Positions 4,795 through 53,097 of a stretch of DNA of 53,414 bases are shown one piece after another (position 1 is the stretch's first letter; each line of letters begins with the position of its first letter). Position numbers and translations under genes: made by a program. Source of the stretch: Octopus bimaculoides (Eukaryota); assembly GCF_001194135.2 (NCBI RefSeq), contig NC_068981.1, forward strand, positions 198,755,377 through 198,808,790. The letters are read 5' to 3'. Below the pieces are notes generated by a model. It did no database searches and was not told where the DNA came from. It saw only the letters and a program-made list of their open reading frames with translations.

Positions 4795-5255
4795 ATCATC
4801 ATCAACATCGTTTAACGTCTGCTTTCCATGCTGGCATGGGTTGGACGATTTGACTGAGGACTGGCGAACCAGATGGCTGCACCAGGCTCCATTCTGATCT
4901 GGCAGAGTTTCTACAACTGGATGCCCTTCCTAATGCCAACCACTCCAAGAGTGTAGTGGGTGCTTTTATGTGCGACCGGCACGAGGGCCAGTCGGGCGGT
5001 ACTGGCGCTGGCCACGCTCAAATGGTGTTTTTTATGTGCCACCTGCACAGGAGCCAGTTCAGCGGCACTAGCAACGACCTCGCTTGAATATTTTTCACGT
5101 GTCACCAGCACAAGTGCCAGTAAGGCGATGCTGGTAACGATCACGCTCGAATGGTGCTTTTTATGTGCCATCGGCACAGAAGCCAGTCAGCTGCTCTGGC
5201 AACGATCACGGTCGGATGGTGCTCTTAGTGCCCCACTAGCACGGATGCCAGTCAT
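4795..5255 (-). repeat. RTE 3'-tail copy with an expanded 65-bp tandem array
   Basis: Units start near 4959, 5024, 5088, 5153 and 5218. Other RTE 3'-tail copies: 8890-9115(+), 10790-10990(-), 14760-14830(+), 16210-16400(-), 26760-26960(-), 27335-27530(-), 28440-28640(+), 30065-30385(+), 30590-31060(-), 32650-32825(+), 34868-35080(-), 43000-43330(-), 48650-48840(-) and 51135-51520(-). Confidence 0.85.
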
Positions 5256-7696: not shown

Positions 7697-7934
7697 CTTG
7701 TATTTCTAGTGTAAGGGTCAGTTGTATGTATGTGTGTATGTGGTGTGCGTATGTTTGTGTGTGTGAGTTGCTATAAATATACTTTGTAAATGTTTAAAAT
7801 TTTGGGGAAACATTTTTATTTCAATAAAATNNNNNNNNNNNNNNNNNNNNNNNNNNNNNNNNNNNNNNNNNNNNNNNNNNNNNNNNNNNNNNNNNNNNNN
7901 NNNNNNNNNNNNNNNNNNTATATATATATATATT

Positions 7935-8445
7935 GCACTGGTTATGTATGGATGAGGACAGCTGTGTGAAGAAGTGCCACTCCCTAACTGTGGAAGGGGT
8001 GAGGTGGTGAAGCATGACCTTTGAACATTGGGCAATGACAGGAGGCTGAGACCTTTGGAAATATGCTGTGATTGAGGAAACCCGGCAGCTAAAGTGAGAT
8101 TGCAGCCATGGCTAATGCCAGTGTTGCATGTCCAGCCCATTTAAGAGTACCCCGATGATATGATGTGCTTGAGAATACCCCAACTGTTCCAGTGGCATGT
8201 AAAAAGCACCATCCAAAGTGGTTGATGCCAGTGCCCCCTGACTGGCTCCCGTGCCAGTGGCACGTAAAAGCACCCACTACACTCTCAGAATGGTTGGCGT
8301 TAGGAAGTGCATCCAGCTGTAGAAACTCTGCCAGATCAGATTGGAGCCTGGTGCAGCCATCTGGCTCGCGAGCCCTCAGTCAAATCATCCAACCCATGCC
8401 AGCATGGAAAGTGGACGTTAAATGATAATAATGATACTAACTATA
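7935..8445 (+). mobile_element. RTE LINE 3' fragment (end of ORF plus 3' UTR)
   Basis: Homologous to about 3830-4350 (gtatggatgaggacagctgtgtg ... ccaacccatgccagcatggaaa, gat tail). Confidence 0.88.
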
Positions 8446-18693: not shown

Positions 18694-19886
18694 CCATCTC
18701 AGTCCTTTTGTCCCATCAGTAAGATGTCTTCTCATTCCCTTTACAGTAGACTTGTTGGATATTTTGACTTCAGACCAAATCTTAAAATGGGAGAACCCGA
18801 TGACACCAGTGATTGTTAATCAGATGTCACAAGTCAAGAAGCTCTATTTCAATACAGCAACAATGTTTTACAAAACTCTTTAGACTTCTAATAGAGGAAT
18901 TCAATGTGCATGGAACTGGACATGGGAAATCAATGTCGAATATTGCCAACAGAGCCAAAATACTCTTTGTTTTCAATGAAAGGCAATCGATCTTAGCGAA
19001 CCATTAGAAAAGAATATTTAAAATATGAAATTTTATGAATAAATAATTTAAGTTAAGAATTCCTCTTCTAAAATAGTTGAAACAGTTCTTANNNNNNNNN
19101 NCCGTTTCATCCCATATTGAATAAATATTAAAAAATGTTGAGAAATAGTCTTAGAATCACTTGTCAGTCAAGTTTGAAATGGAAAATGTTGATTGTAGCG
19201 TAATTTTATAATTTTTGTAAATAAAGAGAAACGCTTAATGTCAAAGATGGAAGAAAATTGGAGAAAGTGGGACAGTTGCTAAAATAGTCAATGAAATACA
19301 TTCCGTAATTTTGATGTAGTGAAACTGATTTTGAGAAGTGACTAAGATAAGTCTCTATCATTTCAGGGATCTAAATTTTTTCCCCCTTTCATTGGGGTTT
19401 ACAAAACTAAACTAAATTAAACTAGAACAGGAAACAAGAATTTATAATTAACAGAAACAATATCGGAAAAAAAAAAAAAATACTAGGCATTTTACAGAGG
19501 TTGTCAAAGAAAAGTTAATACAAACGAGGTACCATTAGCTCTACTCCCAGGAAGTTTACAAGACATAACCAAGATGTCATTGTCCATTACTACAAGTAGA
19601 GCATCTCATAGCGGAAGAAGACATGAAATATTTAGAAAAGTGCGTAGTTGACTGTATCCAGTACCTTACAGAAAAATGAAATCATTGGAATAAGAATTCT
19701 AGAATCAATATTTTCCATATTTTTCATGACTGTAAATGAAGAATTTAGTTTTACAATATTAATGGATTGGACGGGATAGAATAGATGTAAATATATAAAC
19801 ACACAAATAAGATACCTGTGTGTTTGTGTGTAGATAGAGATATACACACGTATATTTGTGTGTGTATATATACACATGTGCATGTA

Positions 19887-21078: not shown

Positions 21079-23564
21079 TAAATCATAAGTAGAGAGAGAG
21101 AATCGGGTATTCTAATGATAAAACAAAACCAAAAAGTTTATAAAAGAACAAATGTCTAATGCTGCATGTGTGAGCAATTTTGAAAAGGTGTTTAATATCT
21201 TGACAATGTCTGCTAGTAGTTTTGTCAGAAGACAAAAAAAAAAAGAAATTCTTGTAATAACCAAAATAAACCCCAGCCAATTGTGACATAACAGGGTCTT
21301 CTTGGAACAACTTCAACAGTAGTAATTTTTACATCATACGTGTGTGTGTGTGTGTGTGTAAAACAGAAACTGTCGTTACTTTTCTGCTCATGTATAACAG
21401 ATACACAATTGTTAATGAAATTTGGATGCAGTTATTCTGAAAGACATCATTTGTTTGAATGTGAATTGTTCCTGAAACTTCTGTTTGAGGCTATAATTTA
21501 GGGCTGTTTTCCCCACCATTCCCGATTATTCAACTTTTAAGTACCATTGTCTCTCCCCCACAGATTATAAAATTTGTTCTATTGAATAAACCCCAGATTT
21601 GATCCATACATGATCCATGACCACTCTAACCCACCCACACACCCCAAATATTAAAAGAAAATTAATAAAAATCTCACTGCTGCCAACCCCCTCCTCTTAT
21701 TCCAGTCTTGATTTGCTTTCAAACTAACTTTAAAGAAATACACCCAAAAATATTTCCTATTTTCAAGCAACAAACTTTTACTCTAAAACCATTTCTAATG
21801 CATTCTGGGATTTTACAGAGGTCTCTTACAGCCTTGATAAATTCATCTGATGCCACAAAATAAAGATGAACTTCTTAGACTAACATTCCATTTATGTACA
21901 TACATGTAAAGGTCTTCTATATTGTGTGTGTGTGTGTGTGTAATTAGTAAGTTCAAAGTTGATTGTCATGAGATAACGAGGTAAAGACATGAATAAAGAG
22001 AAGCAGGGACTTAATAAACTGGTGAAAGAAGAAGAATCTCGAGACAAACTGGAATGTTAGCAAGAAGGCTCCAAATGAAACGGAGTAACTATTAGGTTAG
22101 TTAGCATGGACCCAGTAGCTAATATTAGTGGCTCAAAGTTCAGTGGGGCAGGTCTGTACTATTACTACTACTATTTAAAACTATAAAGATCTGAACACAA
22201 TCAAAATGGACCAGATTGGCAAATAATAAAAAGTGGGAAAAGCCATTGGCTTCTGAAAAATAGTTAAAATAAGAACATTTTTGGAATGAATAATCTTTTG
22301 AAAAAATAAACACCAGACTGAATTTGCGTTTTACTGATTTTTCTCTTCCTATGTCTGAGTAAATTTACCTGATTAGAGGCAAGATTCAGTTCCTTAATTT
22401 CTAAGAAAATTAAAGTTTTAAATGACATCTAAATGAAATGTAAGGCTGCAATAATTATCCAATTAGCAGACAACAATAGTATTTCAATAACTGGCCATAT
22501 GTGTGCGGTGAGAATTGCGAAAGAGATCAGGTATCACTGGCAATACCAACAGTGCTGCCAACGTATCATTGACTAATCAATCTTATATAATTGATCTGCT
22601 GGAATTGAATGGAATACAACATTGGTTTGGAAATTATTTCACTTTTGAACATTTCAATTTCATATCCAAGACACTCTGATTATTATTATTATTATTAATT
22701 TTTTTCTTCTTTTCTTTCAGAAGTGACTCCAGTTTGAAGCTTAATGTGCAACAAATCAAGCAGAGAAGAGGATGGAGGTTCATTTCATAATTATGGGAAA
22801 CATTTTGGGGGAGTTTAATAGTAAATAACAATGAGAAGTGGTGGTGGTGAGGGGNNNNNNNNNNNNNNNNNNNNNNNNNNNNNNNNNNNNNNNNNNNNNN
22901 NNNNNNNNNNNNNNNNNNNNNNNNNNNNNNNNNNNNNNNNNNNNNNAATATTGTGAGGCCAGAAGTGAATGTTGTCTGCATGACATCAACAATCGGATGA
23001 TGACGATGACACAGGCCTCACTTTTTTTTCTTTTTATACTGACTATGTAGAATTTACTTCTTTCTACCAGTTATAACAACAAAAAGAAATTCACTGGTGA
23101 TCATATCACAGTACTATGAATGCTATACATTAACAGTTCGAGGTTTGTATATATAAAGAGATTTTATTGTGGCCATTACACTTGCCAACTGTAAGCTAAG
23201 AGGAGGGGGTGGGAGTTAATTATAAGAAGAAGCGGGAGGAACAAAAGACCCAATGTCCACCTGAGAAGCATGCTTTACTAAACACTGCTTAAAGCTATTG
23301 GAGGGAAAAAGAGAAAGAAAGAAACAAAAAGTGGAGGAGGAGGAGAAGGTGGGGTAGTTGTTTAGATTAATTGGGGTGCAATAATTGTTTTGCACTCACC
23401 CAATCTGTGGTTGGCACTACTATTTAATTAATGGTTTTTATCATTTGGGGTGTCATTTAGTTTGTTTGGCAGTGAAATTCTACCAGAACATTCTGTCTCG
23501 TTTAACACCACAAAACCACCATCGTTATTTGTTGTGTGTTTTGGCGCTGAGCTCAATAATGTTT

Positions 23565-29738: not shown

Positions 29739-31127
29739 CTGGAATGAGAAAAAAAGTAATATATAATTTTATACAGACTGAAATATATATATAGATGTAA
29801 TATAAAGAAGTACATAATTCACAGAGATATGGATGGATGTGTTGGGAAGGTATAACAGCAAAAGACGAATATTGGGAACTGAGTAAGCAGCAATTTCAAA
29901 TGATGAACCCTTGTGATATTTGTTCTGCAGAAGTTGTACAGACAAATCCATGTCAGAAATACAATGAAACAATGATCTTCTCAGTAGAAACCAACAACTA
30001 ACAATGTAATTGTTCAAAATAGTTTCTGCTTTAACATAATCTCTTTCTCTCCATATTTTAAAGGAACAACCATTTGAGGTAATATTTTTTTACTTCCAGC
30101 TTCACCTTACTGGCACTTGTGCCAGTGGCATGTGAACAAAACATTAGACTGACTCCTGTGCAGGTGGCATGTAAAAAATACCATTTGAGCGTGGCCGTTG
30201 TCAGTACTGCCGGACTGGCCTTCGTGCTGGTGGCACATAAAAGCACCCACTACACTCTCAGAGTGGTTGGTGTTAGGAAGGGCATCCAGCTGTAGAAACC
30301 TTGCCAGAACAGATTGGAGCCTGGTGCAGCCATTTGGTTTCACCAGTCCTCAGTCAAATCGTCCAACCCCTGCCAGCATGGAAAGCGAAATATGTGTGTG
30401 TGTGTGTGTGTGTTCATGTCCTGCCACCACTTGACAACCGGTGTTAGTGCGTTTACATCCCCATAACTTAGCAGTTTGGCAAAAGTGATCAATAGCAAGG
30501 CTGCAGCCAAATGAGTGAAACAAGTAAAAGACAAAAGAGAAGAATGTTTAGAATGTTTCTGCAGCGAAAGAAGCAAAGTGAGGAAGTCATCATCATCATC
30601 ATCACCATTTAACATCCACTTGCCGGGCTGGCATGGGTTGGACGGTTCGACCGGGGTCTGGGAAGCCAGGAGGCTGCACCAGGCTCCAATTTGATCTGGC
30701 AGTGTTTCTACAGCTGGATGCCCTTCCTAATGCCAACCACTCTAAGAATGCAATGGGTGCATTTTACGTGTCACTGGCATCGGCCACGTTCAGATGGTGC
30801 TTTTTACATTCCACCAGCACGGGGAGCCAGTCAGGCGCCACTGGCAACAACCCACGCATGAATGGTGCCTATTTTGGTCCACCAGCACAGGAGCCAGTCA
30901 AGCAGCACAGGCATCAGCCACAACTACAATTTCCATTTTGGTTTTACTTGACTTGATAGGTCTTCTCAAGCACAGCATGTCGCCCAACGATTCAAAGGTA
31001 CCTTTTAAGTGGGCTGGTTATGCGACACTGGTGGAGGCTACGGCTGTGATCCCACTTTAAAAGAAGAGCATGGCAACAATTCATTTGATTGAATCAAGAT
31101 GAATAAAGATTGAAAAAGAAAACTTAC

Positions 31128-32869: not shown

Positions 32870-33285
32870 ACATGCAGAAAAGGAGAAAGCATAAACTCCA
32901 GAGACTGCACCCAACATAAGTGGAATCACAAGCAGACTAATAGAGAAAGCCTTGTGACAGGAATCTACTGCTCCATGAACACACTGGGACATTGGACAAC
33001 AGACTGCCTTGAATGCCTGGATAGCTCACTGGAAGAAGTTGATAGCTTTTGGCTATGAAGGAGATGATACCAGTAAGAGAAGTGGTTGATCTGAAAGTTG
33101 CCAGAGTGAGAACTGGTTGGAGAAAGTTCAGGGAGTCACTACTGATACTAGCACCGAAAGTCTTTTCATATCGAATGAAAGGCAGATTGTATGATGCTTG
33201 TGTTAGGATTGCAATGCTGCATGGCAGTGAGACATGGGCCTTGAATGCAGACGACTTGAAAAGACTGGAAAGAATTGAAGCTTTT
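32870..33285 (+). mobile_element. Older RTE LINE fragment
   Basis: VARVRTGWRKFRE...MKGRLYDACVRIAMLHGSETWALNADDLKRLER. Confidence 0.8.
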
Positions 33286-33527
33286 GTTATCTCAGAGTAT
33301 GTTATATATGTCCTTCGTTTTCTAACATGGTGAGGTTAGATTGGAAGGAGTTTGCCCTGCTATTTCTGGCAGATTGAGTAAATACATAGAAGCTCTGTCA
33401 TTGGTTCCAATAACAGGATGTAGCCATGTCCAGCTCTTTGTTATTCACTTAAAAGGGAATTTTATACCAAAAACAAGAACATTCTTTAATTATTTCTAGA
33501 GATAAAAAAAAAATCTGAACCACTTAC

Positions 33528-34721: not shown

Positions 34722-35113
34722 CTGAAGAAAGAAGTAACGATTTGAATCAGTGACATTAATTACATTGTTAATTGGATGAGACACATAAAGAGAGAGAGAG
34801 AGAGAGATAGAGAGAACAATCAATCCCAGAACACAACTGGTACTGTAGTTATTGACCACCACCACCATCGTCGTCATTATTTAGCATCTGCTTTCCATAC
34901 TGGCATGGGCTGGATGGTTTGAAAGGAACCAATGGGCTGTAAGGCTGCATCAGGCTCCAATGACATCTTTGGCATGGTTTCTACAGCTGGATGCCCTTCC
35001 TAACACCATCCCCTTCGTAGGGGTGGATTGTGTGCTTTCTGCCTGAATCACCAGCTCTAACGAGGCTGCCATGCAAAGAGAAAAAGAAAAAAAGGGGGGG
35101 GGAAGCTTTCATT

Positions 35114-36013
35114 CATCATCATCGTTTAACATCTGCTTTCCATGCTGGCATGGGTTGGACGGTTCCATTGAGGACTGGCAAGCCATGAGACTACACCAGG
35201 CTTCTGTGTGCTCTGGCAAGGTTTCTACAGCAGGATGCCCTTCCTAACGCCAACCACTCCAAGAGTGTAGTGGGTGCTTTTTATGTGCCACCAGCACAGG
35301 GGCCAGTCATTTGGCACTGGCATTGGCCACGACAACAGTTTCACTTGACTCAGCAGGTCTTCACAAGCACGGCATATTACCCAACAATTGAATGATGCTT
35401 TTAAATGGGCCAGTTACGTGATGCTGGCATCAGCCATGGCTATGATCTCACTTGGCATGCTGGGTCTTCTCAATCACAGCATATCTCCAAAGGTCTCAGT
35501 CACTTGTCATTGCCTCTGTGAGGTCTAACGTTTGAAGGTTGTTCTTCACCACCTCATCTGATGTCTTCCTGGGTCTACCTTTTCCACTGTTAGGGTGTGA
35601 CACTTCTTCACTCAGCTCTCCTCATCCATACATAGACATAACCATACCAGCGCAGTCCATTCTCTTGCACACCATATCTGATGCTTCTCATATCCAACTT
35701 TTCTCTCAGAGCGCTTACACTGTCGCGTATGCACACTGACATTACACATCCAGTGGAGCATACTGGTTTCGTTTCTTGCAAGCCTATGCATGTCTTCAGC
35801 AGTCACAGCCCATGTTTCACTGCCATGTAGCATGGCTGTTCACACACATGCATCATACAGTCTACCTTTCACTCTGAGCGAGAGGCCCTTTGTCGCCAGT
35901 AGAGGTAAGAGCTCCCTGAACTTTGCCCAGGCTATTCTTATTCTCGCAGCCAAACTCTCAGAGCATTCGCCCCCACTACTGACTTGGTCACCTAGGTAAT
36001 GGAAGCTATCAAC
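35114..36013 (-). mobile_element. RTE LINE 3' fragment (RT C-terminal region plus 3' UTR)
   Basis: Minus frame YLGDQVSSGGECSESLAARIRIAWAKFRELLPLLATKGLSLRVKGRLYDACV..AMLHGSETWAV, homologous to about 3475-4350. Confidence 0.9.
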
Positions 36014-36623
36014 TGAAGAGGAAATATTTGGGAGATGATGGTGGAGGTGGATGGCTTTATGCCAAGGGTTGAAAGGCTAAAAGTATGATAGAGGGGTAAG
36101 CACAGGTGTCTTGTTATAGAGGGGATATACATGGCTGAGGGAGATGAAAGGAAAATAGTGATGGAGTGCCAGAACAAGCTCTCAAGAGGGGGAGGATATG
36201 GATAGGGGTGATGGGAGGGGATGAGAGAGTGTGTGGATACTCATCAGAGGGCAAGGGGGGAGGGGGTAAAAGCAGGTGGAAGTAGAGGTTAATGTGATGA
36301 GAGATGAACAAAGGTGGGGATGCAGCTGATGGGGGAAACACCAGTATGGGGAGGGGGTAAGATATAGGGGTGGCTCAGGAAGGAGAATAGAACAAAAAGT
36401 AGTGGGATACATAATGGGCTGTAATTGTAGGTGGATCATGATGATAGACATGGGAGAGTATTGAGAATGATAGCAGATAAGAGAATGAAATATAGGAGAG
36501 GGGAGAGAGAGAGAGAGAGCAGTGGTTGAGGGTGGTTAGAAGAAATTATGTGAGCAAGGAGAATAAGGAGGAACAGAAAGAGTTCAAGAAGTGGGAGGGA
36601 GGGAGGGAGGGACGCAATATTTG

Positions 36624-37485
36624 NNNNNNNNNNNNNNNNNNNNNNNNNNNNNNNNNNNNNNNNNNNNNNNNNNNNNNNNNNNNNNNNNNNNNNNNNNNNN
36701 NNNNNNNNNNNNNNNNNNNNNNNNNNNNNNNNNNNNNNNNNNNNNNNNNNNNNNNNNNNNNNNNNNNNNNNNNNNNNNNNNNNNNNNNNNNNNNNNNNNN
36801 NNNNNNNNNNNNNNNNNNNNNNNNNNNNNNNNNNNNNNNNNNNNNNNNNNNNNNNNNNNNNNNNNNNNNNNNNNNNNNNNNNNNNNNNNNNNNNNNNNNN
36901 NNNNNNNNNNNNNNNNNNNNNNNNNNNNNNNNNNNNNNNNNNNNNNNNNNNNNNNNNNNNNNNNNNNNNNNNNNNNNNNNNNNNNNNNNNNNNNNNNNNN
37001 NNNNNNNNNNNNNNNNNNNNNNNNNNNNNNNNNNNNNNNNNNNNNNNNNNNNNNNNNNNNNNNNNNNNNNNNNNNNNNNNNNNNNNNNNNNNNNNNNNNN
37101 NNNNNNNNNNNNNNNNNNNNNNNNNNNNNNNNNNNNNNNNNNNNNNNNNNNNNNNNNNNNNNNNNNNNNNNNNNNNNNNNNNNNNNNNNNNNNNNNNNNN
37201 NNNNNNNNNNNNNNNNNNNNNNNNNNNNNNNNNNNNNNNNNNNNNNNNNNNNNNNNNNNNNNNNNNNNNNNNNNNNNNNNNNNNNNNNNNNNNNNNNNNN
37301 NNNNNNNNNNNNNNNNNNNNNNNNNNNNNNNNNNNNNNNNNNNNNNNNNNNNNNNNNNNNNNNNNNNNNNNNNNNNNNNNNNNNNNNNNNNNNNNNNNNN
37401 NNNNNNNNNNNNNNNNNNNNNNNNNNNNNNNNNNNNNNNNNNNNNNNNNNNNNNNNNNNNNNNNNNNNNNNNNNNNNNNNNNNNN
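36624..37485. other. Assembly gap (largest of eight)
   Basis: N runs at 7831-7918, 19092-19101, 22855-22946, 36624-37485, 39475-39684, 40617-41266, 45321-45610 and 52365-52489. Confidence 1.
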
Positions 37486-37930: not shown

Positions 37931-38307
37931 TAGCATACAGTCTGGACCTAGTTCCCTCGGATTATTACCTGTTCTGATCCAGAAATTACTTCCTGTACTC
38001 CACAGTGCTTCGTCAACCAAGAGGAAGTGGAAGCTTCAGTAGAAGAGTTGTTCCCCTTGAAGGACAAGAACTAGAATCAGGGTGGGATCAAAGAACTGGC
38101 AGAAAAGTGGCTTCAGGCGCTGCAGCACAATGGCCTCTTCTTTCAATGCCAGGCTGTTTTTGTTGCAATTTGATGAATAAAGCAAATGAGTTACCAAAAT
38201 TTAGCAAAACTTTTCGATTCAACACAAAGACAATCAGTTGCTACAACTGAATACTCATAGGCTGCAGAGTAAAGGGTTAGGTGAGTCCAGAGCACAACAT
38301 TGATTAA

Positions 38308-38512
38308 TGAATGACAAGGGAACAGGAATCATGTAATCAACTTCACTAGCTTACAGCAGTTTCTGCTATAAGAAGCAGTGCACTCAGAGCTGGGTGTTTG
38401 TGCAACAACTTACAGCTTCCTCAGAACTATTCAAATGATATGTATGGTTATTTTGGAGAGTATTTAAATACTTAAACATTAAGCTGATTACACAATTCCT
38501 GTTCCCTTATCC
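38308..38512. mobile_element. MITE with about 33-bp TIRs and TTAA flanks (Kolobok-like, tentative)
   Basis: acaagggaacaggaatcatgtaatcaactt versus aagctgattacacaattcctgttcccttat. TTAA at 38304-38307 and 38513-38516; the right terminus is CC. Confidence 0.6.
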
Positions 38513-38629
38513 TTAATTACTACTACTTCAGCTCATCACCACCACCACCACCACCACCATCACTGTTTAACATCTGTTTTCCATAATGGCAATATATATA
38601 TTAAAGTTTATTTGCCAACACATATTATA

Positions 38630-38989
38630 CATGGTCTGATCAATAAGTATCCAGACTATTGCCATAGTAATGAAGCTAAGGCAAGCGAAATGAAGCGGCT
38701 TGTCACAAATTGAGTTTGATCTCTGCTGTGCATGTGCACTAAGTTTTAATGTTCTAGCTCACTTCTGCTGTTTCCAGAAGTGCTTGGAAGGAAGGTGTGT
38801 AGTGTGTGATCACATGCTACACACCTTCCTTCCAAGCACTGCTGTAAACAGCAGAACTGAGCTAGGATCTTAAAACTTAGTGCACATGCACAGCAGAAAT
38901 CAAAGTCAATTTGTGACAAGCTGCTTCACTTTCCATGCTTTAACTTTGTTACTATGGTAACAGTTTGAATACTTATTGATCAGACTTTG
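38630..38989. mobile_element. 360-bp palindromic mariner-derived MITE with TA target duplication
   Basis: TA|CATGGTCTGATCAATAAGTAT ... ATACTTATTGATCAGACTTTG|TA. The arms pair to a central GATC, with the axis at 38809/38810. Confidence 0.85.
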
Positions 38990-39231
38990 TATGTTATATT
39001 AAAGTTGATTTGCCAATATAACGTGGCAGTCCTGCATAGGACTACGTTACTACTTTTTACCACGATATATACCATCATCATCATCGTCATTTAACGTCCT
39101 CTTTTCATGCGGGCAATGTATTTAGATATATTTGCTGTCCTGTGTACAACAGCACACTTGTAGGCAATAGTTGTAGTTTGTATTTACAAACAAAGAGGGA
39201 CAGATGAAAATAAGGAATGACGGATACATAC

Positions 39232-39351
39232 CAAAGTAAACTGCTTCAAATAATGTTTCTTTATCAAACTGCAGACAAAGGCAACGAAACCAGCAACGTA
39301 GAGAGAGAACGACAGAAAACGGTGGTAAGTGACAAAGAAACGAAGAAAGTT
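39232..39351 (-). CDS. Cds: Cds exon B, 120 nt, phase 0-0
   Basis: Acceptor cttttccag|AAC, donor TTG|gtatgt. [40 protein letters not shown] matches the YHRF.SF.LY..GF..FV.SL.KKHY segment. Not in the ORF track in this frame. Confidence 0.95.
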
Positions 39352-39684
39352 CTGGAAAAGAAATGAAAAACATCAGACATTGAGAGATTTCCATCACATA
39401 TAAAGATGTTTGTATGCATATGTATGTATGTATGTGTCTGTATGTGTTTGACTGTATATATATATATATATATANNNNNNNNNNNNNNNNNNNNNNNNNN
39501 NNNNNNNNNNNNNNNNNNNNNNNNNNNNNNNNNNNNNNNNNNNNNNNNNNNNNNNNNNNNNNNNNNNNNNNNNNNNNNNNNNNNNNNNNNNNNNNNNNNN
39601 NNNNNNNNNNNNNNNNNNNNNNNNNNNNNNNNNNNNNNNNNNNNNNNNNNNNNNNNNNNNNNNNNNNNNNNNNNNNNNNNNNNN

Positions 39685-40591
39685 AATATGCTGTACCCAA
39701 CGACTTGCAGACAGTGTATTCCGTTGAATTAATTAACTTATTTTGTAACTAAAATGACAAAAAACCACAAAATACAAGTGTTTATGACAAACCATGTTAT
39801 ATTGATAACCGGGTTACAAATAAAAGTACGTTAGGAATTCGAGAATAAACATAAACTTAATCTTACAGCTGTTTCGGCCTAGCATTGGCAGGCCCCATTC
39901 TATCCGAATAGTTCCTGCCGGAGTAATTAGCGGATGAAATGCTGAAATGGGGGTACATGCACGATTCGCTAGGCTTCTTCAGAGATTCACAAAAAATTCC
40001 ATACAAATATACAGTAAGAAATAAAAACAAAAATAAAATAAAAATAAAGGTACAGCAAGAATAAAGTAAATAAATGAAAAATGAAAATATAAAATATAAA
40101 AATATAAGGCACATAAAAAGCCTACAAACAGTACATGGGGTCATACAAATAGTTATAGACACTCCAATATCTAAGTCCGTGTGCATAACCACACTCAGAT
40201 GTTCAATGATTCAAGATCATGTATATATGTGAGTACACACGTGTGTACATATCCATCTATCCCCTCACTCATATGTATACACAGGCATTCTCCGACGTAC
40301 ACGGTCCCTGGTACCAACACTATCTGCTGTGTTTTGAAGGCTGTTTATGTTTTTAAAAAAATGTTGCTGAGTGTGTGTCAGTTCTGTATATTTCGGATGG
40401 GTCTCTGTGGAAGTTGTAAGTTTGTGTTTATTCTCGAATTCCTAACGTACTTTTATTTGTAACCCGGTTATCAATATAACATGGTTTGTCATAAACACTT
40501 GTATTTTGTGGTTTTTTGTCATTTTAGTCACAAAATAAGTTAATTAATTCAACGGAATACACTGTCTGCAAGTCGTTGGGTACAGCATATT
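39685..40591. mobile_element. Non-autonomous element with 175-bp inverted repeats enclosing the hammerhead
   Basis: 39685-39859 is the reverse complement of 40417-40591 with about 2 mismatches seen. The outer ends run towards gaps bordered by TA repeats. No convincing internal ORF. Confidence 0.85.
39859..39987 (-). ncRNA. Type I hammerhead ribozyme (Penelope/retrozyme-like) with long stem II insertion
   Basis: Minus strand AATCT-CTGAAGA-A-GCCTAGC-[84 nt]-GCTAGGC-C-GAAA-C-AGCT-GT-A/AGATT. Shows a 5-bp stem I, CUGANGA core, perfect 7-bp stem II, GAAA, 2-bp stem III with palindromic AGCU loop and a GUA cleavage triplet. Predicted cut between 39864 and 39863. One deviation: A-C at pair 10.1/11.1. 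Confidence 0.75.
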
Positions 40592-42450
40592 ATCCTCCAT
40601 TTTCTAATTGCTATATNNNNNNNNNNNNNNNNNNNNNNNNNNNNNNNNNNNNNNNNNNNNNNNNNNNNNNNNNNNNNNNNNNNNNNNNNNNNNNNNNNNN
40701 NNNNNNNNNNNNNNNNNNNNNNNNNNNNNNNNNNNNNNNNNNNNNNNNNNNNNNNNNNNNNNNNNNNNNNNNNNNNNNNNNNNNNNNNNNNNNNNNNNNN
40801 NNNNNNNNNNNNNNNNNNNNNNNNNNNNNNNNNNNNNNNNNNNNNNNNNNNNNNNNNNNNNNNNNNNNNNNNNNNNNNNNNNNNNNNNNNNNNNNNNNNN
40901 NNNNNNNNNNNNNNNNNNNNNNNNNNNNNNNNNNNNNNNNNNNNNNNNNNNNNNNNNNNNNNNNNNNNNNNNNNNNNNNNNNNNNNNNNNNNNNNNNNNN
41001 NNNNNNNNNNNNNNNNNNNNNNNNNNNNNNNNNNNNNNNNNNNNNNNNNNNNNNNNNNNNNNNNNNNNNNNNNNNNNNNNNNNNNNNNNNNNNNNNNNNN
41101 NNNNNNNNNNNNNNNNNNNNNNNNNNNNNNNNNNNNNNNNNNNNNNNNNNNNNNNNNNNNNNNNNNNNNNNNNNNNNNNNNNNNNNNNNNNNNNNNNNNN
41201 NNNNNNNNNNNNNNNNNNNNNNNNNNNNNNNNNNNNNNNNNNNNNNNNNNNNNNNNNNNNNNNNNNCATACTTACATCTACATGTGTATATATATGCATA
41301 TCAGGGTACAGGACGTTAGAACAATGAACTACATATATATATATGGGAGAATGTACAAAAAAAAAACAACAACAGGCGAGGACAGGTGGTGTAGAATGTA
41401 CGAAATATATATATATATAAATATATATTATTTATATTATTAAACAACACACATGCATTTCCAAGTAAGTTAATCTTAATAATTTTGATGCAACTCCGTC
41501 CTGTACTATTTTTTCTCTTTCTCTCTTCCTTTCTCTAATTCTTTTTTCTCCCCTTCTTCCTCTTCGCTTTGTTTTTCTCTCATCCTTTCTCTAATCCTTT
41601 TTCTCCCCTTTACCGTTTCTATCTGTCCCCCTCTGTGTAACTGTTGATGGTTTCTTTACAATTTTAAAAGATCCTATTTCCAAGGAAAGAGAAACAAATT
41701 TTGAGAAGAAAAATGAAATTCAGTGTTTTATGTTTGTTTCAGATGGGATTTATATCTTCTCACTGCACCTCATGTTCCATCATCTCCTGATAAACATTGT
41801 AACACAGAAAACCCAACAAGCTTTGATGTGTAGGTCATATTTATTGTCTTGGTCTTTATGGCTGGAAGCCCTACCAACCACCAACCACTTTAAGACATGC
41901 TTTGACAACATTCCTTGTTCCATCAACTCCACAAAGATTGCTAACAACAGAACTAAAATACCCCTCCCCCCGTATCTTGTATTAATTTCATTGTTTTTAT
42001 TCTGCTTTTGCTCCCCTCAACAGGTTGCCTGTACCACAGTTTCTGGAGTGCACTTTTATAGCATTAAATTTGAGCAGCAAAAATGGGTGGAAGGTCACTA
42101 TATGGAAGGTCATTATATGTGATTATTAAAAGAACAATTTAATTTATACAGTTATAATTTGGAGAATTAAAAGATATAGAAAGGCTACTTCCTATTAGGT
42201 AATAACAAAACAAAACTGTCCGGCTATTATTGATTATTCATATAGATAATCAATGCTATCAATAACAAGTATTGACAGACTACTTTGAATAGGAGAAAAC
42301 TAAAAATCACTGAAAACAAAAAAAAACAACAAAAAACAAAACAAAACATAGAATCAATTCTAATGTTTCCAGTCAGACTACTAACAACCCCCAACTCAAA
42401 ATCTGGATCAACAAATTAAAAAACTTTCAAACTGCTCTGATCGGGTCATC

Positions 42451-42627: not shown

Positions 42628-43489
42628 CTTTACAACAAAACATTTAGTAAAAACTTGTGGCTAAAAAATGATTTTCTTTCTGTTTATTATGAATTAATCA
42701 GAAGACGATGAGGTAATTATGACCTTTCCAGGAAGAAAGAACAGTATGGGACATACCAGCCTCCCCCATCTCAATGCCACTGATGTTAACTGAGGGAAAG
42801 GCAAAGGGGCCGATACAACTTGGCACCAGTGATGTCGCAACTCATTTCTACAGCTGAGTGAACTGGAACAGTGTGAAATAAAGTGTCTTGCTCAAGAACA
42901 CAACATGCAGCCCGGTCCGGGAATCAAACTCACTACCTCATGATTGTGAGCCCAATGCTCTAACTACTGAGCCACGCACCTCTACACACACACATGCTGA
43001 TATCATCATCATCATCGTTTAACGTCTGTTTTCCTTGCTGGTATGGGTTGGACGGTTTGACTGAGGAGAGACAGCAGCTGCACCAGGCTCCAGTTTGGGC
43101 TGGCAATGTTTCTACAGTTGGATATCCTTTGTAATACCAAACACTTCAAGAGTGTAGTGGGAGCTTTTTATGTGCCACTGGCACAGGAGCCAGTCAGGCA
43201 GTACTGGCACCGACTGCATTCAGATAACGCCTTTTACATTGCCACCGGCACGGTGGGGCCAGTCAGGTGGTACTGGCATCGGCCAGGTATCGACCACATT
43301 TGGACAGATGTGATTTTTCAGTCTTACCAGGGACTTATACTCTTTTGTATAAAGATGCAGCCATGATAGATGGGTGCCACTTACAGCAGGTGTTACAATA
43401 TTGCTTTGGTGCACAGAATGACATTTCTGTTGGCCTCCTGATCACACTTTCTTTTCCCTGCAACTAGTAGAGATGTTAACAACTTCCCT

Positions 43490-44420
43490 GTCTCTGTCAT
43501 TTCTCTGATGACTTCTAAAGCCTGTCCTACTTAGACAGACGCACCCACATTTGTTACATATTTAATTGATTTGGATGCCAATGTACTCAGGCATATTCAC
43601 ATCAAGACCTTTACAAACATCTCTCTTGAGCTGTTCATGCTTGATATAATTTCATTTGAATTCCATCTTCCCATCATGCACTGCTTTCCTCCATCATGAA
43701 GGACCCACAGCTGGGTTTTCCTATCCATTTCCCAAGATATTGACTTTCTTCAATGAATTCTTGATGCACTCCTTCTTTGTTAATTTCATTTCTTTAGCCA
43801 TGGACTAACTCACCATACAAAAATTGCTTAGAGATGCAATCATCTTCGTAATTGGTGCTGAAATACTGGAGACTATATCGGTAGACTGTATTCAAGGACT
43901 TCAACAACATTTACATACATTTGCCATCAGAGACCAAGCATATGAGGGTGACACTGTCTATGAAATCACTCCAGTCTTTTCATACGACTCCAGCAAACAA
44001 CCCAGAACTCACATGTATAAAGTAACCAAGACAAAATGTAAGTATTGCAGACTTCTAAGTTTGTCTCAATTGAACTTCCATGCTAGGGCTATTAATGTCT
44101 ATTTCTGAATGTTTCACTGGTTTTCTTGGTTCAGGGAGAGATCTCATCATCAAGAATATTTGTCACATTTACATTACTTGTTCAAATACATGGATTCATC
44201 CACAACCAGCAACTTCTGTCCACACATGTAACAGCTTAGCTCAGAATTGGTTTCACCTGGTGCAGGTTGGTACATTAAGACTTTTTCAAGTTGATTGTCA
44301 CACCCAATGCACTGCATGCTGTCAACAAGGAGTCTATAAGATGATGTCATGTGACTTAACCATATGACATTCATAAGATTACAGCCATTTCGCAACCATC
44401 TTCATGTCATATTCATTTCA
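43490..44420 (-). mobile_element. RTE (BovB-like) LINE remnant, C-terminal part
   Basis: GVTINLK and MYQPAPGETNSELSCYMCGQKLLVVDESMYL (typical ..YQPAPG..) plus a terminal CGCVCLSRTGFRSHQRK zinc-finger-like motif. Confidence 0.7.
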
Positions 44421-45127
44421 GTATGCAAGAAATTACATGTACATGTTTTTTTCATTAATAATATATACCCAGCATTATACAATAGAATTGAATATTCACA
44501 AATTAGTGCAAATAAAGAAAGCTAGCTCTTCAGATCACCTGAACATCTTGGTTACATAAAGAGTTCAACTCTAAATATACAGACAGAAAATACTCTTTAT
44601 ATACACAATGTATGGAAGACAGGAACTGGAGAAAATTATATTGGTTTGGCCAGCAAAAGGTAAGCGTCTCAGTAAAGCCATATTGTATTGTTATTATGAT
44701 AGCAAAGAAATTTACTTCCCATATGAACATCTTCATATCAATTAAGCCAAAGTGCTAGATTGAAAGGGAGGAATTCACCATCCTGTTGCTGTAACCATGA
44801 CGTCCAAGTGATCTGATGAGGTAGCTTCCTTTATTTGCTCTGACTTATGAATATACAATCCTATTGTATAAAGCCGAGCAGAGTAATGCAAATGCACAGG
44901 CATAATTTCTGGCATTCTGAAACTAATGATATGAGAAGAAGGTTGTGAAACGGCTGTAAACCTACGGAAGTCACATGGTTAAATAGATCTGTATTCACTT
45001 CTAGGATCTTCTGTTACACGGAGACTTGGCATTGATTACTATGTGGGCTGATGGCTAAGCCTCTAAGAGGACTTTGTTGTGATAGCTGCTGCAGCATTCT
45101 CTCAATCCATATCTTTCACTTCTCATA

Positions 45128-45197
<70 letters not shown>

Positions 45198-46230
45198 CAG
45201 GGTGCGGTGAATAAACTGTCATCTATGTTATGCAAAAATGTAAATAATACTGACATCTCATTTTAGCTTATATTTACTGAAGTTACATTGTGTGCATACA
45301 TAATGTAACTTTGCTAAATANNNNNNNNNNNNNNNNNNNNNNNNNNNNNNNNNNNNNNNNNNNNNNNNNNNNNNNNNNNNNNNNNNNNNNNNNNNNNNNN
45401 NNNNNNNNNNNNNNNNNNNNNNNNNNNNNNNNNNNNNNNNNNNNNNNNNNNNNNNNNNNNNNNNNNNNNNNNNNNNNNNNNNNNNNNNNNNNNNNNNNNN
45501 NNNNNNNNNNNNNNNNNNNNNNNNNNNNNNNNNNNNNNNNNNNNNNNNNNNNNNNNNNNNNNNNNNNNNNNNNNNNNNNNNNNNNNNNNNNNNNNNNNNN
45601 NNNNNNNNNAATCACCATTGGCTTCAACCACAGCCTCCAGGTGACTTCTGAATCTGCAACTCTTCTGGATAGTCTCCCTGTTTAAGTTGGTGAATGCTGC
45701 CATAATCCTTGCCTTCAGGTCATCTTTGGTGTTACAAGGAGTTCTGTTGGTCCCTCGCTCAACTGCACCCCACACGTAATAATCAAGGGGGTTGCAGTCT
45801 GGGGAGTTAGGTGGCCAGATGCTAGGGGTGATGTGGTTGCAGAAATTATCTGACAGCCATGACTGGGTTCTCCTGCATAGGACAGAGTCCTGTTGCCAGA
45901 CATAGGGTCTTCCCGCAGCCACCCTCTTGACCCAGGGCAGCACTACCACCTCCAGGCACTTGATGTAGGCCTCTGTGTTGAGTCTGAGGCTGTGTGGGAA
46001 GATGAATGAAGACATAATGTCGCCATCACTAGTGATTAATCCAAACACTATGATGTTGGCTGGACGTTTGATTTCTATCACTCTTACTGCTCTGTCCTCA
46101 GATTGACACCCAAACACTCTGAAATGTTCGTATTGGAGCTTTCAGTGCAAATGCCAAGCAATACAGCATGCTGTTTCCAAATTTCTGGCAGAGTGAATTG
46201 CATCATGGTACTGTTTTTTTCTCATAGACA
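45198..46230 (-). mobile_element. Internally deleted Tc1/mariner-superfamily element, probably maT (DD37D)
   Basis: Catalytic half VFGLITSDGD, YVWQQDS, WPPNSPDCNPLDYYVWG and an N-terminal piece MMQFTLPEIWKQHAVLLGI..ISECLGVNLRT from 46206. A terminus TA|CAGGGTGCGGTG lies at 45196-45209; the other terminus was not recognised. Confidence 0.8.
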
Positions 46231-48004: not shown

Positions 48005-49169
48005 ATAATAATAATAATAATAATAATAAAAATGCGCTATGGAAAGCACTCTCCATCTAAAATGGAATAAATGTGATAATTTTAGCATGTATAGCAAAAC
48101 AAAAGTGCCCTTGCTACTCTTGGCCTCCAGAAGATGCCTGGTACTAAGGCAGCTGAAATAAAGTTATAATGAAAGGAAACCATTAATAATAATGCCAAAA
48201 ACTGATAAAACTCAGAGAGGAAATGCAGAATCTGTAGAAAAGAGGATGGAAGTATTAACCACCACCCATGTGAATACAGTAAGTAGTACAAAAAGGGTAC
48301 AAATGATGACATCACTGTGTCAATAAGGGAGCCCATTGTCTGTGAAAGAATGGAGAAAATATTTCCATATAAAGAAGTGAATATAGAGATAACGAATGAA
48401 AACTGAATTATTCCAAATAAAGATGGGTTTCTTTGGAAGTAAAAGACTCAGGTAAATATATATAAGCAGAAGCCTGTGACTTGTGCCTAAAAGTAACAAT
48501 GGAAATAGCACAACAATGTACGGTACTCACATATTACACCCCACAAACATACACACAAATATATACACCAGAGAGAAAATAACATTATTAAGAACTGCCC
48601 ACATTATATAGGGTATCCTCAAACACATTTACACACACAATATATATGTATCATCATTTAATGTCCAGTTCTCATGCTGTCATGTGTTGAATGGTTTGAC
48701 CAAAGCTGATAAGGCCAGGGGCCGTACCAGGCTCCATTGTCTGTTCTGGCATGGTTTCTATGACTGGATACCCTTCCTAATGCCAACCACTCCATAGAGT
48801 GCACTGGGTGCTTTTTATGTGGCACCAACAGAGAAACAACTGTCAGCCTTACTGCATGTGCAGAACCTGGGATTAATAGGTGTGGACTCTCAGAGCCTTG
48901 GTTAGCAACCCACCTAGTGATGGAGTCACAATAAAAATACTGGTGACTGCACAACCTTACAAATGCTACCTCTAAATGAGTGATGTCGAAATGAAATAAT
49001 AATCACTGGACCGGAACTGTTAATGATGAAGGTGTTGTATGTGGCAGGTAAGGGCCGCCTGATCAAGCTTGTCAAAGGTGCGAAAGGTTAAAAAATGAAA
49101 TGGAAACAAATGGTTTAACAAAACTGTAATTGAATGATGGCTGAGAAGTGAACCAAATAAAAGAGGTTT

Positions 49170-52364: not shown

Positions 52365-53097
52365 NNNNNNNNNNNNNNNNNNNNNNNNNNNNNNNNNNNN
52401 NNNNNNNNNNNNNNNNNNNNNNNNNNNNNNNNNNNNNNNNNNNNNNNNNNNNNNNNNNNNNNNNNNNNNNNNNNNNNNNNNNNNNNNNNTTTATCTTATT
52501 TAAATATAAATATTGGCCAAAAAGAAACAAAAACCAGAGAGCTGTATAATAAAGTGCAAGGCATATGTAATGCATATGAACCCATATAGATGGGTCCATA
52601 GACTGGAACAATTTTGAGTTTGTCATAATGGCAATCAAAAAAGTAGTTAAATAAAAAGTGGGGTTTCCATTTTGTGCAACATTTGTTAATATGATTGATT
52701 TCTTTCAGTTTCCATGTACGAAATCCACACACAAGGCTTTGATAAACATGGATTTTGCTGACTGTCTTGCACGAGTGATTTGTTTACAGTGGATCAAATA
52801 ATTGAGGTGTACATTAACTCACATTCATCCTCCATCAAATCGATGTTGTCTGAACAGGTGCATGGTGTAGCACACGTCAGGTGTGGGAGTGATTGCAGAG
52901 CAATGTGAGGTGAGGTGTTTTGCTCAACAACACAAGGCAACACCAGGTCCAGGAACTGAAACCATGACCTTGTAATCAGGAGTGCAATACCTTAACCACC
53001 AGGCCACACATACACACACATATACACTGACTTACACATGTACATATACATACATGCATATACACACTTACACATGTACAAATATATACATATATAT

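What the first reader, a model, noticed from the sequence alone, without database searches (positions are those of the whole stretch)
39859..39987. Hammerhead ribozyme with a large structured stem II domain in a Cds intron, in the sense of the pre-mRNA
Seen: on the minus strand all hammerhead parts occur in order and pair. They are AATCT/AGATT (stem I), CUGAAGA, GCCUAGC/GCUAGGC (stem II), GAAA, AC-AGCU-GU (stem III) and the GUA cleavage triplet. The 84-nt loop II also looks folded by eye (GCA/UGC, CCCCAUUU/GAAUGGGG, AUCCG/CGGAU). Known: type I hammerheads with very short, palindromic-loop stem III are typical of Penelope-like elements and animal retrozymes, and tend to cleave as dimers. Those minimal forms normally have a short stem II. 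Inference: this is an unusual variant with a large inserted domain, about 510 nt upstream of the exon B acceptor, where it could cut the nascent transcript or release a mobile RNA.
Basis: partly seen in the sequence, partly recalled or inferred. Interest (0 to 1): 0.9.

Follow-up and report, generated by a model that had tools for sequence, protein, structure and literature searches.

The report
Retroelement-type minimal hammerhead motif in octopus intron
The hammerhead ribozyme motif is really there and is not a chance match, but it fits the already described minimal hammerheads that Penelope-like retroelements scatter by the thousand through animal genomes, so it is most likely a transposon relic in a Cds intron; its only odd features are a long insert in stem II and a mismatch at that stem's base.

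Summary
Observation confirmed. On the minus strand, 39987..39859 carries every hammerhead (HHR) element in order: helix I 5 bp, CUGAAGA, helix II 7-8 bp closing an 84-nt loop, GAAA, and a 2-bp helix III with a palindromic AGCU loop. Cleavage is predicted between 39864 and 39863.

It is not chance. My descriptor expects about 0.014 hits per window from Markov simulations and from 720 decoy cores. The window has a second motif of the same build (HHR-B, 38429..38347) and a diverged head-to-head pair (C and D, about 44377-44965).

The shared features are those published for Penelope-like-element (PLE) "min-HHRs" (Cervera & de la Peña 2014). These are a short helix I, a long helix II, an extra nucleotide after A9, a tiny palindromic helix III, mostly solitary copies, and pairs on opposite strands.

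The flanks look like retroelement insertions. An inverted copy of the sequence downstream of A and of B starts within 5-8 nt of the predicted cleavage site, and assembly gaps surround A.

Two features are atypical: the long loop II, and an A·C (A) or A·A (B) mismatch at the base of stem II. Rfam hammerhead models do not score A or B. No RT gene lies nearby. Activity, conservation and genome-wide copies could not be tested.

Verdict: new member of a known kind, low to moderate interest.

The parts
39859..39987 (-). HHR-A, the reported motif. Type I minimal hammerhead with helix I 5 bp, CUGAAGA, extra A, helix II 7-8 bp, 84-nt loop II, unpaired C, GAAA, and helix III A-U/C-G closing AGCU. Predicted cleavage is between 39864 (A17) and 39863.
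   Evidence: Sequence read; descriptor hit; chance controls; folds
39884..39967 (-). The 84-nt loop II insert of HHR-A. It folds into two hairpins in the MFE.
   Evidence: MFE -25.2 kcal/mol, z = -2.3. No similar sequence elsewhere in the window.
38347..38429 (-). HHR-B, a second motif of the same build: UAGUU | CUGAGGA | A | GCUGUAAG ..36 nt.. CUUAUAGC | A | GAAA | C UGCU G | UA | AGCUA. Predicted cleavage is between 38352 and 38351. It lies on the same contiguous block and strand as exon 39351-39229.
   Evidence: A competing 10-bp hairpin CUUAUAGCAG/CUGCUGUAAG is the MFE.
44377..44536 (-). HHR-C, a degenerate hammerhead-like motif: GAU | CUGAAGA | G-C-started imperfect helix II enclosing about 110 nt | GAAA | U GGCU G | UA | AUC.
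   Evidence: No excess fold stability.
44804..44965 (+). HHR-D, a homologue of C (82% identity) on the opposite strand and head-to-head with it. It carries CUGAUGAG ... GAAAC GGCU GUA. Its helix I has decayed.
39685..39859 (-). Repeat X of HHR-A, the sequence immediately 3' of helix I. It runs into the N gap at 39684.
   Evidence: Inverted repeat I1, 175 nt, 99% complementary. Alignment of the boundary.
40417..40591 (+). Inverted copy of repeat X. It lacks the hammerhead, and its 5' end lies within about 5 nt of the position matching the predicted cleavage site. The homologous sequence continues for 25 more bases to the N gap at 40617, but the other arm is cut by its own gap there, so the repeat's true length is unknown.
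38305..38343 (-). Repeat X of HHR-B, starting 8 nt after the predicted cleavage site.
38481..38519 (+). Inverted copy of HHR-B's repeat X (85% identity), 51 nt upstream of HHR-B on the minus strand.
39229..39351 (-). Cds exon ([12 protein letters not shown]...KQFTL) lying between HHR-A and HHR-B. This is context, not part of the element.

Best explanation
HHR-A is a minimal type I hammerhead ribozyme motif of the kind carried in the terminal repeats of Penelope-like retroelements (PLEs) and their non-autonomous derivatives. It came into a Cds intron of an octopus (best match Octopus bimaculoides) as part of a retroelement insertion.

In the element's own life cycle, two such motifs pair through their palindromic helix III (ACAGCUGU in A). 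They then cut the multimeric element transcript after GUA, which defines the RNA ends used for reverse transcription. This step is known from the literature for the class and is inferred here.

In its present place the motif is a passenger. As a single copy with a 2-bp helix III and a mismatched base of stem II, it probably cleaves little or not at all, and it has no role in Cds expression. HHR-B and the C/D pair are older relics of related insertions.

The 84-nt loop II is either a feature of the source element's family or a secondary insertion. Which of the two was not resolved.
For: Shown here:
1. All 13 invariant core positions and the three helices are present in A and in B.
2. The motif count far exceeds chance. 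I found 2-3 hits against 0.013-0.09 expected, from Markov simulations and from decoy cores in the real sequence.
3. Negative controls are clean. Of 49 metagenomic matches to the bare core sequence pattern, none had the helices. About 62 kb of other eukaryotic DNA gave no hit.
4. A and B share the core but differ in 7 of 15 helix pairs, on both sides, with pairing kept.
5. The inverted copy of the sequence downstream of A starts within about 5 nt of the predicted cleavage site, and that of B 8 nt after it. This is expected if copies were made from HHR-cleaved RNA.
6. C and D form a head-to-head pair about 250 bp apart. Textbook min-HHRs in metagenome contig L040 have the same arrangement.
7. 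HHR-A sits between assembly gaps and next to a 99% inverted repeat.

From the literature:
- PLE min-HHRs have helix II of 7-8 bp, helix I of 4-5 bp, an unpaired nucleotide between A9 and 10.1, and a palindromic minimal helix III.
- They occur in thousands of mostly solitary copies, sometimes as pairs on opposite strands 100-700 bp apart, and show low or no monomer activity (PMC4209133).
- PLE insertions make inverted-repeat structures that break short-read assemblies (PMC8557442).
Against: - No reverse transcriptase or GIY-YIG endonuclease ORF lies near any of the four motifs. ORFs of 70 aa or more between 37.4 and 46.4 kb match no Pfam family. The link to PLEs therefore rests on motif architecture and insertion structure only.
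- Rfam hammerhead models do not score A or B even at E <= 10.
- A and B have an unpaired nucleotide on the 3' side of the stem II base as well. This gives A.C and A.A at 10.1/11.1 rather than the published 5' bulge plus G10.1-C11.1. Mismatches there other than U.U are reported as poorly tolerated (PMC3088659).
- Loop II of 84 nt (36 nt in B, about 110 nt in C and D) is much longer than in the described min-HHRs, about 5 nt in the L040 example.
- No other genomic copies of A's own family could be retrieved, so its copy number and the conservation of loop II are unknown.
- The covariation between A and B is partly circular, because both were found with a descriptor that demands pairing.
Confidence: 0.7

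Rival explanations
1. The hammerheads belong to a mobile element that is not a PLE. It could be a SINE-like or retrozyme-like short element that carries its own hammerhead, as Sm-alpha does in schistosomes. It could also be a foldback or terminal-inverted-repeat DNA element that happens to contain one. The ribozyme would still be an element function, but with a different carrier and mobilisation route.
For: - No RT or EN ORF lies nearby.
- The C/D repeat unit is only about 230 bp and is almost entirely hammerhead.
- HHR-A lies inside a structure with 175-nt, 99% inverted arms that could be read as terminal inverted repeats.
- Animal retrozymes are themselves reported to derive from PLE terminal repeats (bioRxiv 10.64898/2026.07.22.740005).
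Against: - There is no tandem array.
- There is no tRNA-like head.
- In type I retrozymes the body lies in the helix I loop, not in loop II.
- The inverted arms begin at the cleavage site rather than flanking the element symmetrically.
- The motif details match PLE min-HHRs.
Confidence: 0.15
2. The motif is a host-used intronic ribozyme, like the conserved amniote HH9 and HH10. It would cut the Cds pre-mRNA, alone or by pairing HHR-A with HHR-B, to regulate expression or to release an exon-containing RNA.
For: - A, B and C are all on the strand of the gene.
- A and B flank exon 39351-39229.
- The helix III segments of A and B can pair with each other in 7 of 8 positions, at -8.5 kcal/mol.
- Intronic sense-strand hammerheads are known in vertebrates (reference list of PMC6765202).
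Against: - Published min-HHRs are nearly inactive.
- The active folds are 4-7 kcal/mol above the MFE.
- There is a mismatch at 10.1/11.1.
- C and D are visibly decaying, with no compensatory changes between them (and my reading of it).
- The 99% identical arms next to A indicate a recent insertion, not an old conserved element.
- A's orientation is not secure.
- Vertebrate retrozymes are reported to be depleted from introns.
Confidence: 0.07
3. It is a chance match. The hammerhead consensus is short, and such motifs are expected by chance in large genomes.
For: - Perreault et al. state that consensus-conforming sequences occur by chance in large databases (PMC3088659).
- HHR-A alone has an expectation of about 0.013 per 53-kb window, which is not negligible over many windows.
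- Rfam models give no hit.
Against: - A second motif with the same idiosyncrasies lies 1.4 kb away, and a homologous pair lies 4.4 kb away.
- Only the true core gave 2 hits among the 720 core combinations tried; the 719 decoys averaged about 0.011 hits (0.014 over all 720), and none reached 3 with the looser descriptor.
- None of 49 sequence-only matches in metagenomes had the helices.
- The repeat boundaries coincide with the predicted cleavage sites.
Confidence: 0.08

Closest known systems
Minimal hammerhead ribozymes (min-HHRs) of metazoan Penelope-like elements (Cervera & de la Peña 2014, PMC4209133; Lünse, Weinberg & Breaker 2017, cited in PMC6765202)
   Same: - Type I topology.
- CUGANGA and GAAA cores.
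- Helix I of 5 bp and helix II of 7-8 bp.
- An extra nucleotide after A9.
- Helix III reduced to A15.1-U16.1 plus one C-G pair with a 4-nt loop. The eight nucleotides are a perfect palindrome in A, which allows dimer formation.
- Solitary copies and opposite-strand pairs.
- Inverted-repeat insertion structures.
   Different: - Loop II is 84 nt (36 nt in B, about 110 nt in C and D) rather than a few nucleotides.
- A second unpaired nucleotide sits between helix II and G12, giving an A.C or A.A mismatch.
- No PLE ORF is found beside them.
- As far as my searches of the held literature go, the class has not been described in cephalopods.
Non-LTR retrozymes of animals: tandem repeats of about 170-400 nt with type I HHRs that give circular RNAs (PMC7229834)
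   Same: - Type I hammerhead.
- Weak helix III that favours dimers.
- AT-rich short non-coding carrier.
- A mismatch at the base of helix II occurs in an active family (U.U in axolotl HHR_Amex2).
   Different: - There is no tandem array here.
- The extra sequence is in loop II, not between successive helix I strands.
- No conserved loop 1 - loop 2 contacts can be recognised.
Rfam Hammerhead_1 (RF00163) and the intronic amniote hammerheads HH9 and HH10
   Same: Same catalytic core and type I topology, in an intron on the sense strand.
   Different: The covariance models do not score A or B at any threshold tried. HH9 and HH10 are deeply conserved single-copy elements with canonical helices. Conservation could not be tested here, and the flanks point to a recent insertion.
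Discontinuous hammerhead of mammalian CLEC2 3' UTRs (Martick et al. 2008, cited in PMC6765202)
   Same: A hammerhead whose halves are separated by a long insert inside one helix.
   Different: There the insert is in helix I and is hundreds of nucleotides long, inside a 3' UTR. Here the insert is in helix II and the motif is intronic.

Membership tests
Hammerhead ribozyme (catalytic motif) | Invariant core C3 U4 G5 A6 N7 G8 A9 ... G12 A13 A14 A15.1 ... U16.1 H17, in order | tested here: met
   HHR-A has CUGAAGA ... GAAA ... U A. HHR-B has CUGAGGA ... GAAA ... U A.
Hammerhead ribozyme (catalytic motif) | Three helices around the core, with helix II starting at a G10.1-C11.1 pair next to A9 and G12 | tested here: inconclusive
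   Helices I (5 bp), II (7-8 bp) and III (2 bp) all form. One unpaired nucleotide lies on each side between the core and the first G-C pair, giving A.C in A and A.A in B. In A, G10.1 could instead pair with the C next to G12 at the cost of a bulge. In B it cannot.
Hammerhead ribozyme (catalytic motif) | Self-cleavage 3' of H17 | not testable with these tools
   This needs in vitro transcription of monomer and dimer, or RNA end mapping.
Hammerhead ribozyme (catalytic motif) | Score above threshold with the curated Rfam covariance models | tested here: not met
   No hammerhead family hit at gathering score on the whole window, nor at E <= 10 on 39750-40100 or 38300-38480. The long loop II and minimal helix III are plausible reasons.
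PLE-type minimal hammerhead (min-HHR) | Helix I 4-5 bp, helix II 6-8 bp, minimal helix III with palindromic 15.2-16.2 and loop 3 | tested here: met
   A has 5 bp, 7-8 bp and ACAGCUGU, a perfect palindrome. B has 5 bp, 8 bp and ACUGCUGU, palindromic in 6 of 8 positions. The criteria come from PMC4209133.
PLE-type minimal hammerhead (min-HHR) | Conserved extra nucleotide between A9 and 10.1 | tested here: met
   An A follows CUGARGA in both A (39975) and B (38417). It is absent in C and D.
PLE-type minimal hammerhead (min-HHR) | Located in the terminal repeats of an element encoding RT plus GIY-YIG endonuclease, or in truncated copies of such elements | tested here: inconclusive
   No RT or EN domain occurs in ORFs of 70 aa or more between 37.4 and 46.4 kb. 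Gaps flank A. The insertion architecture fits: an inverted 5'-truncated copy and a head-to-head pair. Most published copies are solitary.
PLE-type minimal hammerhead (min-HHR) | Many copies per genome, forming consensus families with covariation | tested here: inconclusive
   There are four motifs in 53 kb, of two or three sequence families. There were none in 21 kb of O. vulgaris. The octopus genome could not be searched.
Animal non-LTR retrozyme | Head-to-tail tandem repeats of 150-450 bp, each with one type I HHR | tested here: not met
   No tandem array around any motif (self-comparison).
Conserved host intronic hammerhead (HH9/HH10-like) | Orthologous position and sequence conserved across distant species | not testable with these tools
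   The Cds loci of O. bimaculoides v2, O. vulgaris and Argonauta hians span 160-290 kb and were not delivered.

The most novel reading that the evidence does not exclude
Octopus carries a lineage of minimal hammerheads in which helix II has grown into a large folded domain of 36-110+ nt. Sense-strand copies in neighbouring introns, here A and B flanking a 123-nt Cds exon, would pair through their helix III segments. They would then cut the pre-mRNA and release a ~1.5-kb exon-containing RNA with 5'-OH and 2',3'-cyclic phosphate ends. That RNA could be circularised by the tRNA ligase RtcB, or the cuts could tune Cds output.
Probability: 0.04. Interest if true: 0.75.

Novelty: new member of a known kind. 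Interest (0 to 1): 0.27.

Why it matters
The finding adds cephalopods to the animals whose genomes carry Penelope-type minimal hammerheads. It also shows that these motifs can tolerate, or acquire, long inserts in helix II, which the usual search descriptors and Rfam models miss.

For genome annotation, the practical point is that such motifs in octopus introns should be read as retroelement relics unless conservation or cleavage is shown.

If a genome-wide census showed that the long helix II domain is conserved, it would be a modest structural extension of the hammerhead family. It would be worth a cleavage assay, but it is not a new kind of ribozyme.

Tried and rejected
- Rfam cmscan found no hammerhead hit, on the whole window at gathering score or on both motif regions at E <= 10.
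- A covariance model built from A and B with loop II cut out (R1) could not bridge the long loops. It found nothing further that was convincing in the window.
- I tried to fetch the orthologous Cds introns from O. bimaculoides v2, O. vulgaris and Argonauta hians. All three gene ranges exceed 100 kb, so no DNA was delivered.
- I tried to sample the octopus genome through TE and nuclear-receptor proteins. This gave only 21 kb of O. vulgaris (L001) and two contigs of unknown eukaryotes (L002, L003). None held a hammerhead.
- I searched 1.84 billion representative proteins with the spurious ORF that spans HHR-A, hoping for called ORFs over other copies. Only repetitive proteins came back.
- A metagenome scan for an exact 25-mer of HHR-A gave 0 hits.
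- A metagenome scan for the bare core pattern gave 49 hits, all without helices.
- Pfam scan of ORFs of 70 aa or more around the motifs matched no family.
- There are no tRNA genes in the window and no tandem arrays around the motifs.
- Supplementary files of the two key PLE papers are not held, and the Lünse et al. paper is not held.
- I considered and rejected a retrozyme tandem array, a tRNA-derived SINE head, and a chance match.

Full report
**What is there.** On the minus strand, 39987..39859 reads AAUCU CUGAAGA A GCCUAGC [84 nt] GCUAGGC C GAAA C AGCU G UA AGAUU.

- Helix I has 5 bp.
- Helix II has 7 bp plus a possible G.U pair.
- Helix III is A15.1-U16.1 plus C-G, closing AGCU.
- The cleavage triplet is GUA, so the predicted cut lies between 39864 and 39863.
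- One unpaired A follows CUGAAGA and one unpaired C precedes GAAA.

The computed minimum uses other hairpins, at -35.5 kcal/mol. The loop alone is only moderately more stable than shuffles (z = -2.3). The catalytic fold of the whole motif lies 4 kcal/mol above its MFE.

- Simulated windows with the same dinucleotide make-up give 0.013 hits each. At the observed stem lengths there were none in 300 windows.
- In the real window, 720 permuted decoy cores give a mean of 0.014 hits. Only the true CUGANGA/GAAA pair gives two.
- A looser version gives three hits, which none of 719 decoys reaches.
- A scan of public metagenome contigs for the bare sequence pattern CTGANGANG-N(12-42)-GAAACNGCTGTAAG returned 49 matches, about the number expected by chance. 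None had the helices.

**More copies in the same window.**

The second descriptor hit is HHR-B, on the minus strand at 38429..38347: UAGUU CUGAGGA A GCUGUAAG [36 nt] CUUAUAGC A GAAA C UGCU G UA AGCUA. It shares the unusual details of A:
- an A after the 5' core;
- an unpaired base before GAAA;
- helix II starting G-C then C-G;
- a C-G pair closing an NGCU loop;
- GUA followed by AG.

Its helices have different sequences. Seven of 15 pairs differ on both sides and all still pair. I discount this as proof of selection, because both motifs were found with a descriptor that demands pairing.

The pattern GAAACNGCTGTAAG with up to 2 mismatches then showed two more motifs:
- C, minus strand, 44536..44377, with CUGAAGAG ... 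GAAAUGGCUGUAAUC;
- D, plus strand, about 44804-44965, with CUGAUGAG ... GAAACGGCUGUAAAC.

C and D are 82% identical copies of one roughly 230-bp unit, placed head to head about 250 bp apart. Each has about 110 nt inside helix II. The differences between them break pairs rather than compensate, and D has lost helix I, so they are decaying relics.

**Context.** The window is part of a CDP-diacylglycerol synthase (Cds) gene on the minus strand. Its exons fit Octopus bimaculoides proteins best.

- A, C and D lie in the intron upstream of exon 39351-39229, and B lies in the intron downstream of it.
- HHR-A sits on a 932-bp island between N gaps (39475-39684 and 40617-41266). Its orientation relative to the gene therefore depends on scaffolding. 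B is on the same uninterrupted block as the exon.
- The island carries a 175-nt, 99% inverted repeat (39685-39859 and 40417-40591).
- Read on the strand of the hammerhead, the sequence that follows helix I of A ('repeat X') recurs upstream in inverted orientation. That inverted copy begins within about 5 nt of the position matching the cleavage site and lacks the hammerhead.
- B has the same layout on a smaller, older scale. An 85% inverted copy (38519..38481) matches the sequence that starts 8 nt after its cleavage site.
- No Pfam family matches any ORF of 70 aa or more between 37.4 and 46.4 kb. There are no tRNA genes and no tandem arrays.

**Comparison with what is known.** Cervera & de la Peña (2014; PMC4209133) described 'min-HHRs' in the terminal repeats of Penelope-like elements and scattered through metazoan genomes.

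- Helix II is larger than usual (7-8 bp) and helix I shorter (4-5 bp).
- There is an unpaired nucleotide between A9 and 10.1.
- Helix III is reduced to a palindrome, so that two motifs must pair to be active.
- There are thousands of heterogeneous copies per genome, most of them solitary. Some are pairs on opposite strands 100-700 bp apart.
- Monomers show no detectable cleavage, and dimers show little.

Craig et al. (2021; PMC8557442) add that PLE insertions typically carry an inverted 5'-truncated copy. This forms inverted repeats that break short-read assemblies.

HHR-A and B match these features point by point. C and D match the opposite-strand pair. By chance, my metagenome scan also brought in a textbook example: contig L040 has two identical min-HHRs head to head (ACUC CUGAUGA U GGGCAG..CUGCCC GAAAC AU GUA GAGU). 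This shows what the ordinary form looks like, with a loop II of about 5 nt.

**What is not ordinary.**

- Loop II is 84 nt in A, 36 nt in B and about 110 nt in C and D.
- A and B have a second unpaired nucleotide, between helix II and G12. The base of helix II is therefore an A.C or A.A mismatch.
- A U.U mismatch at this place occurs in active natural hammerheads (PMC7229834; PMC3088659). Other mismatches are reported to be worse.
- In A, G10.1 could instead pair with the C next to G12 if one C bulges. In B that is not possible.
- Rfam's hammerhead models score neither motif.
- Searches of the held literature found no description of hammerheads in cephalopods.

**Most likely mechanism.** The motifs are parts of retroelement insertions.

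- In the element's transcript, two hammerheads pair through helix III. The A:A segment duplex is -13.1 kcal/mol and a perfect 8-bp palindrome. They cut after GUA, and the cleaved RNA is the template for new copies.
- That repeat X starts at or just after the cleavage site, in both A and B, is what this predicts. This is my inference, not a demonstrated step.
- The 99% identity of A's arms suggests a recent insertion. B, C and D are older.
- In the Cds intron the motifs are passengers. Single copies of this class are nearly inactive, their active folds are not the most stable ones, and three sense-strand copies in introns of a conserved gene argue against efficient cutting.

**What could not be done.**

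- The octopus genome could not be searched for further copies.
- The orthologous Cds introns could not be fetched, because the gene ranges are 160-290 kb.
- Whether the 84-nt loop is a conserved domain or a secondary insertion remains open, as does any activity.

**Verdict.** The claim of an unusual ribozyme acting on the Cds transcript is not supported. This is a new member of a known kind, with an atypically long helix II insert that would deserve a genome-wide check.

Noticed in passing
window 38627-38992: A 366-bp stretch that is 86% self-complementary (a near-perfect palindrome), in the intron between exon 39351-39229 and HHR-B.
   Followed up: no
window, e.g. 4795-5058, 8184-8435, 30148-30386, 35113-35331, 43002-43208, 48650-48830: More than 20 copies, on both strands, of a SINE-like repeat of about 180-250 bp at 70-89% identity. 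ARAGORN finds no tRNA-like part.
   Followed up: partly
window 2543-3427 (+), and related C-terminal fragments at about 33046-33330 and 35615-36076: Fragments of a non-LTR (RTE-like) reverse transcriptase. The fragment queried (2831-3427) is 74% identical to an Octopus vulgaris 'hypothetical predicted protein' (P0130).
   Followed up: partly
window 39862-39866, 38350-38354, 44378-44382 (minus) and 44956-44960 (plus): All four hammerhead-like motifs read GCU|GUAAG, GUAAU or GUAAA across the cleavage site. On the gene's sense strand this is also a good 5' splice-site-like sequence. PLEs of Drosophila virilis have an intron ending at helix I (PMC4209133). I did not test whether this matters.
   Followed up: no
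L040 3224-3266 (-) and 3412-3454 (+); L028 53-95 (+): Metagenome contigs pulled in by chance carry textbook PLE-type minimal hammerheads. L040 has two identical copies head to head, 145 bp apart. They served as a positive control for my descriptor.
   Followed up: partly
window 38365-38387 (minus strand): In HHR-B the 3' strand of helix II can pair with the helix III / cleavage-site segment instead, forming a 10-bp hairpin (CUUAUAGCAG AAA CUGCUGUAAG). This hairpin is the MFE and would compete with the catalytic fold.
   Followed up: partly
window 7831-7918, 19092-19101, 22855-22946, 36624-37485, 39475-39684, 40617-41266, 45321-45609, 52365-52489: Eight runs of N (2,326 bases in all) show that the window comes from a scaffolded draft assembly. 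Distances and orientations across them are estimates.
   Followed up: yes
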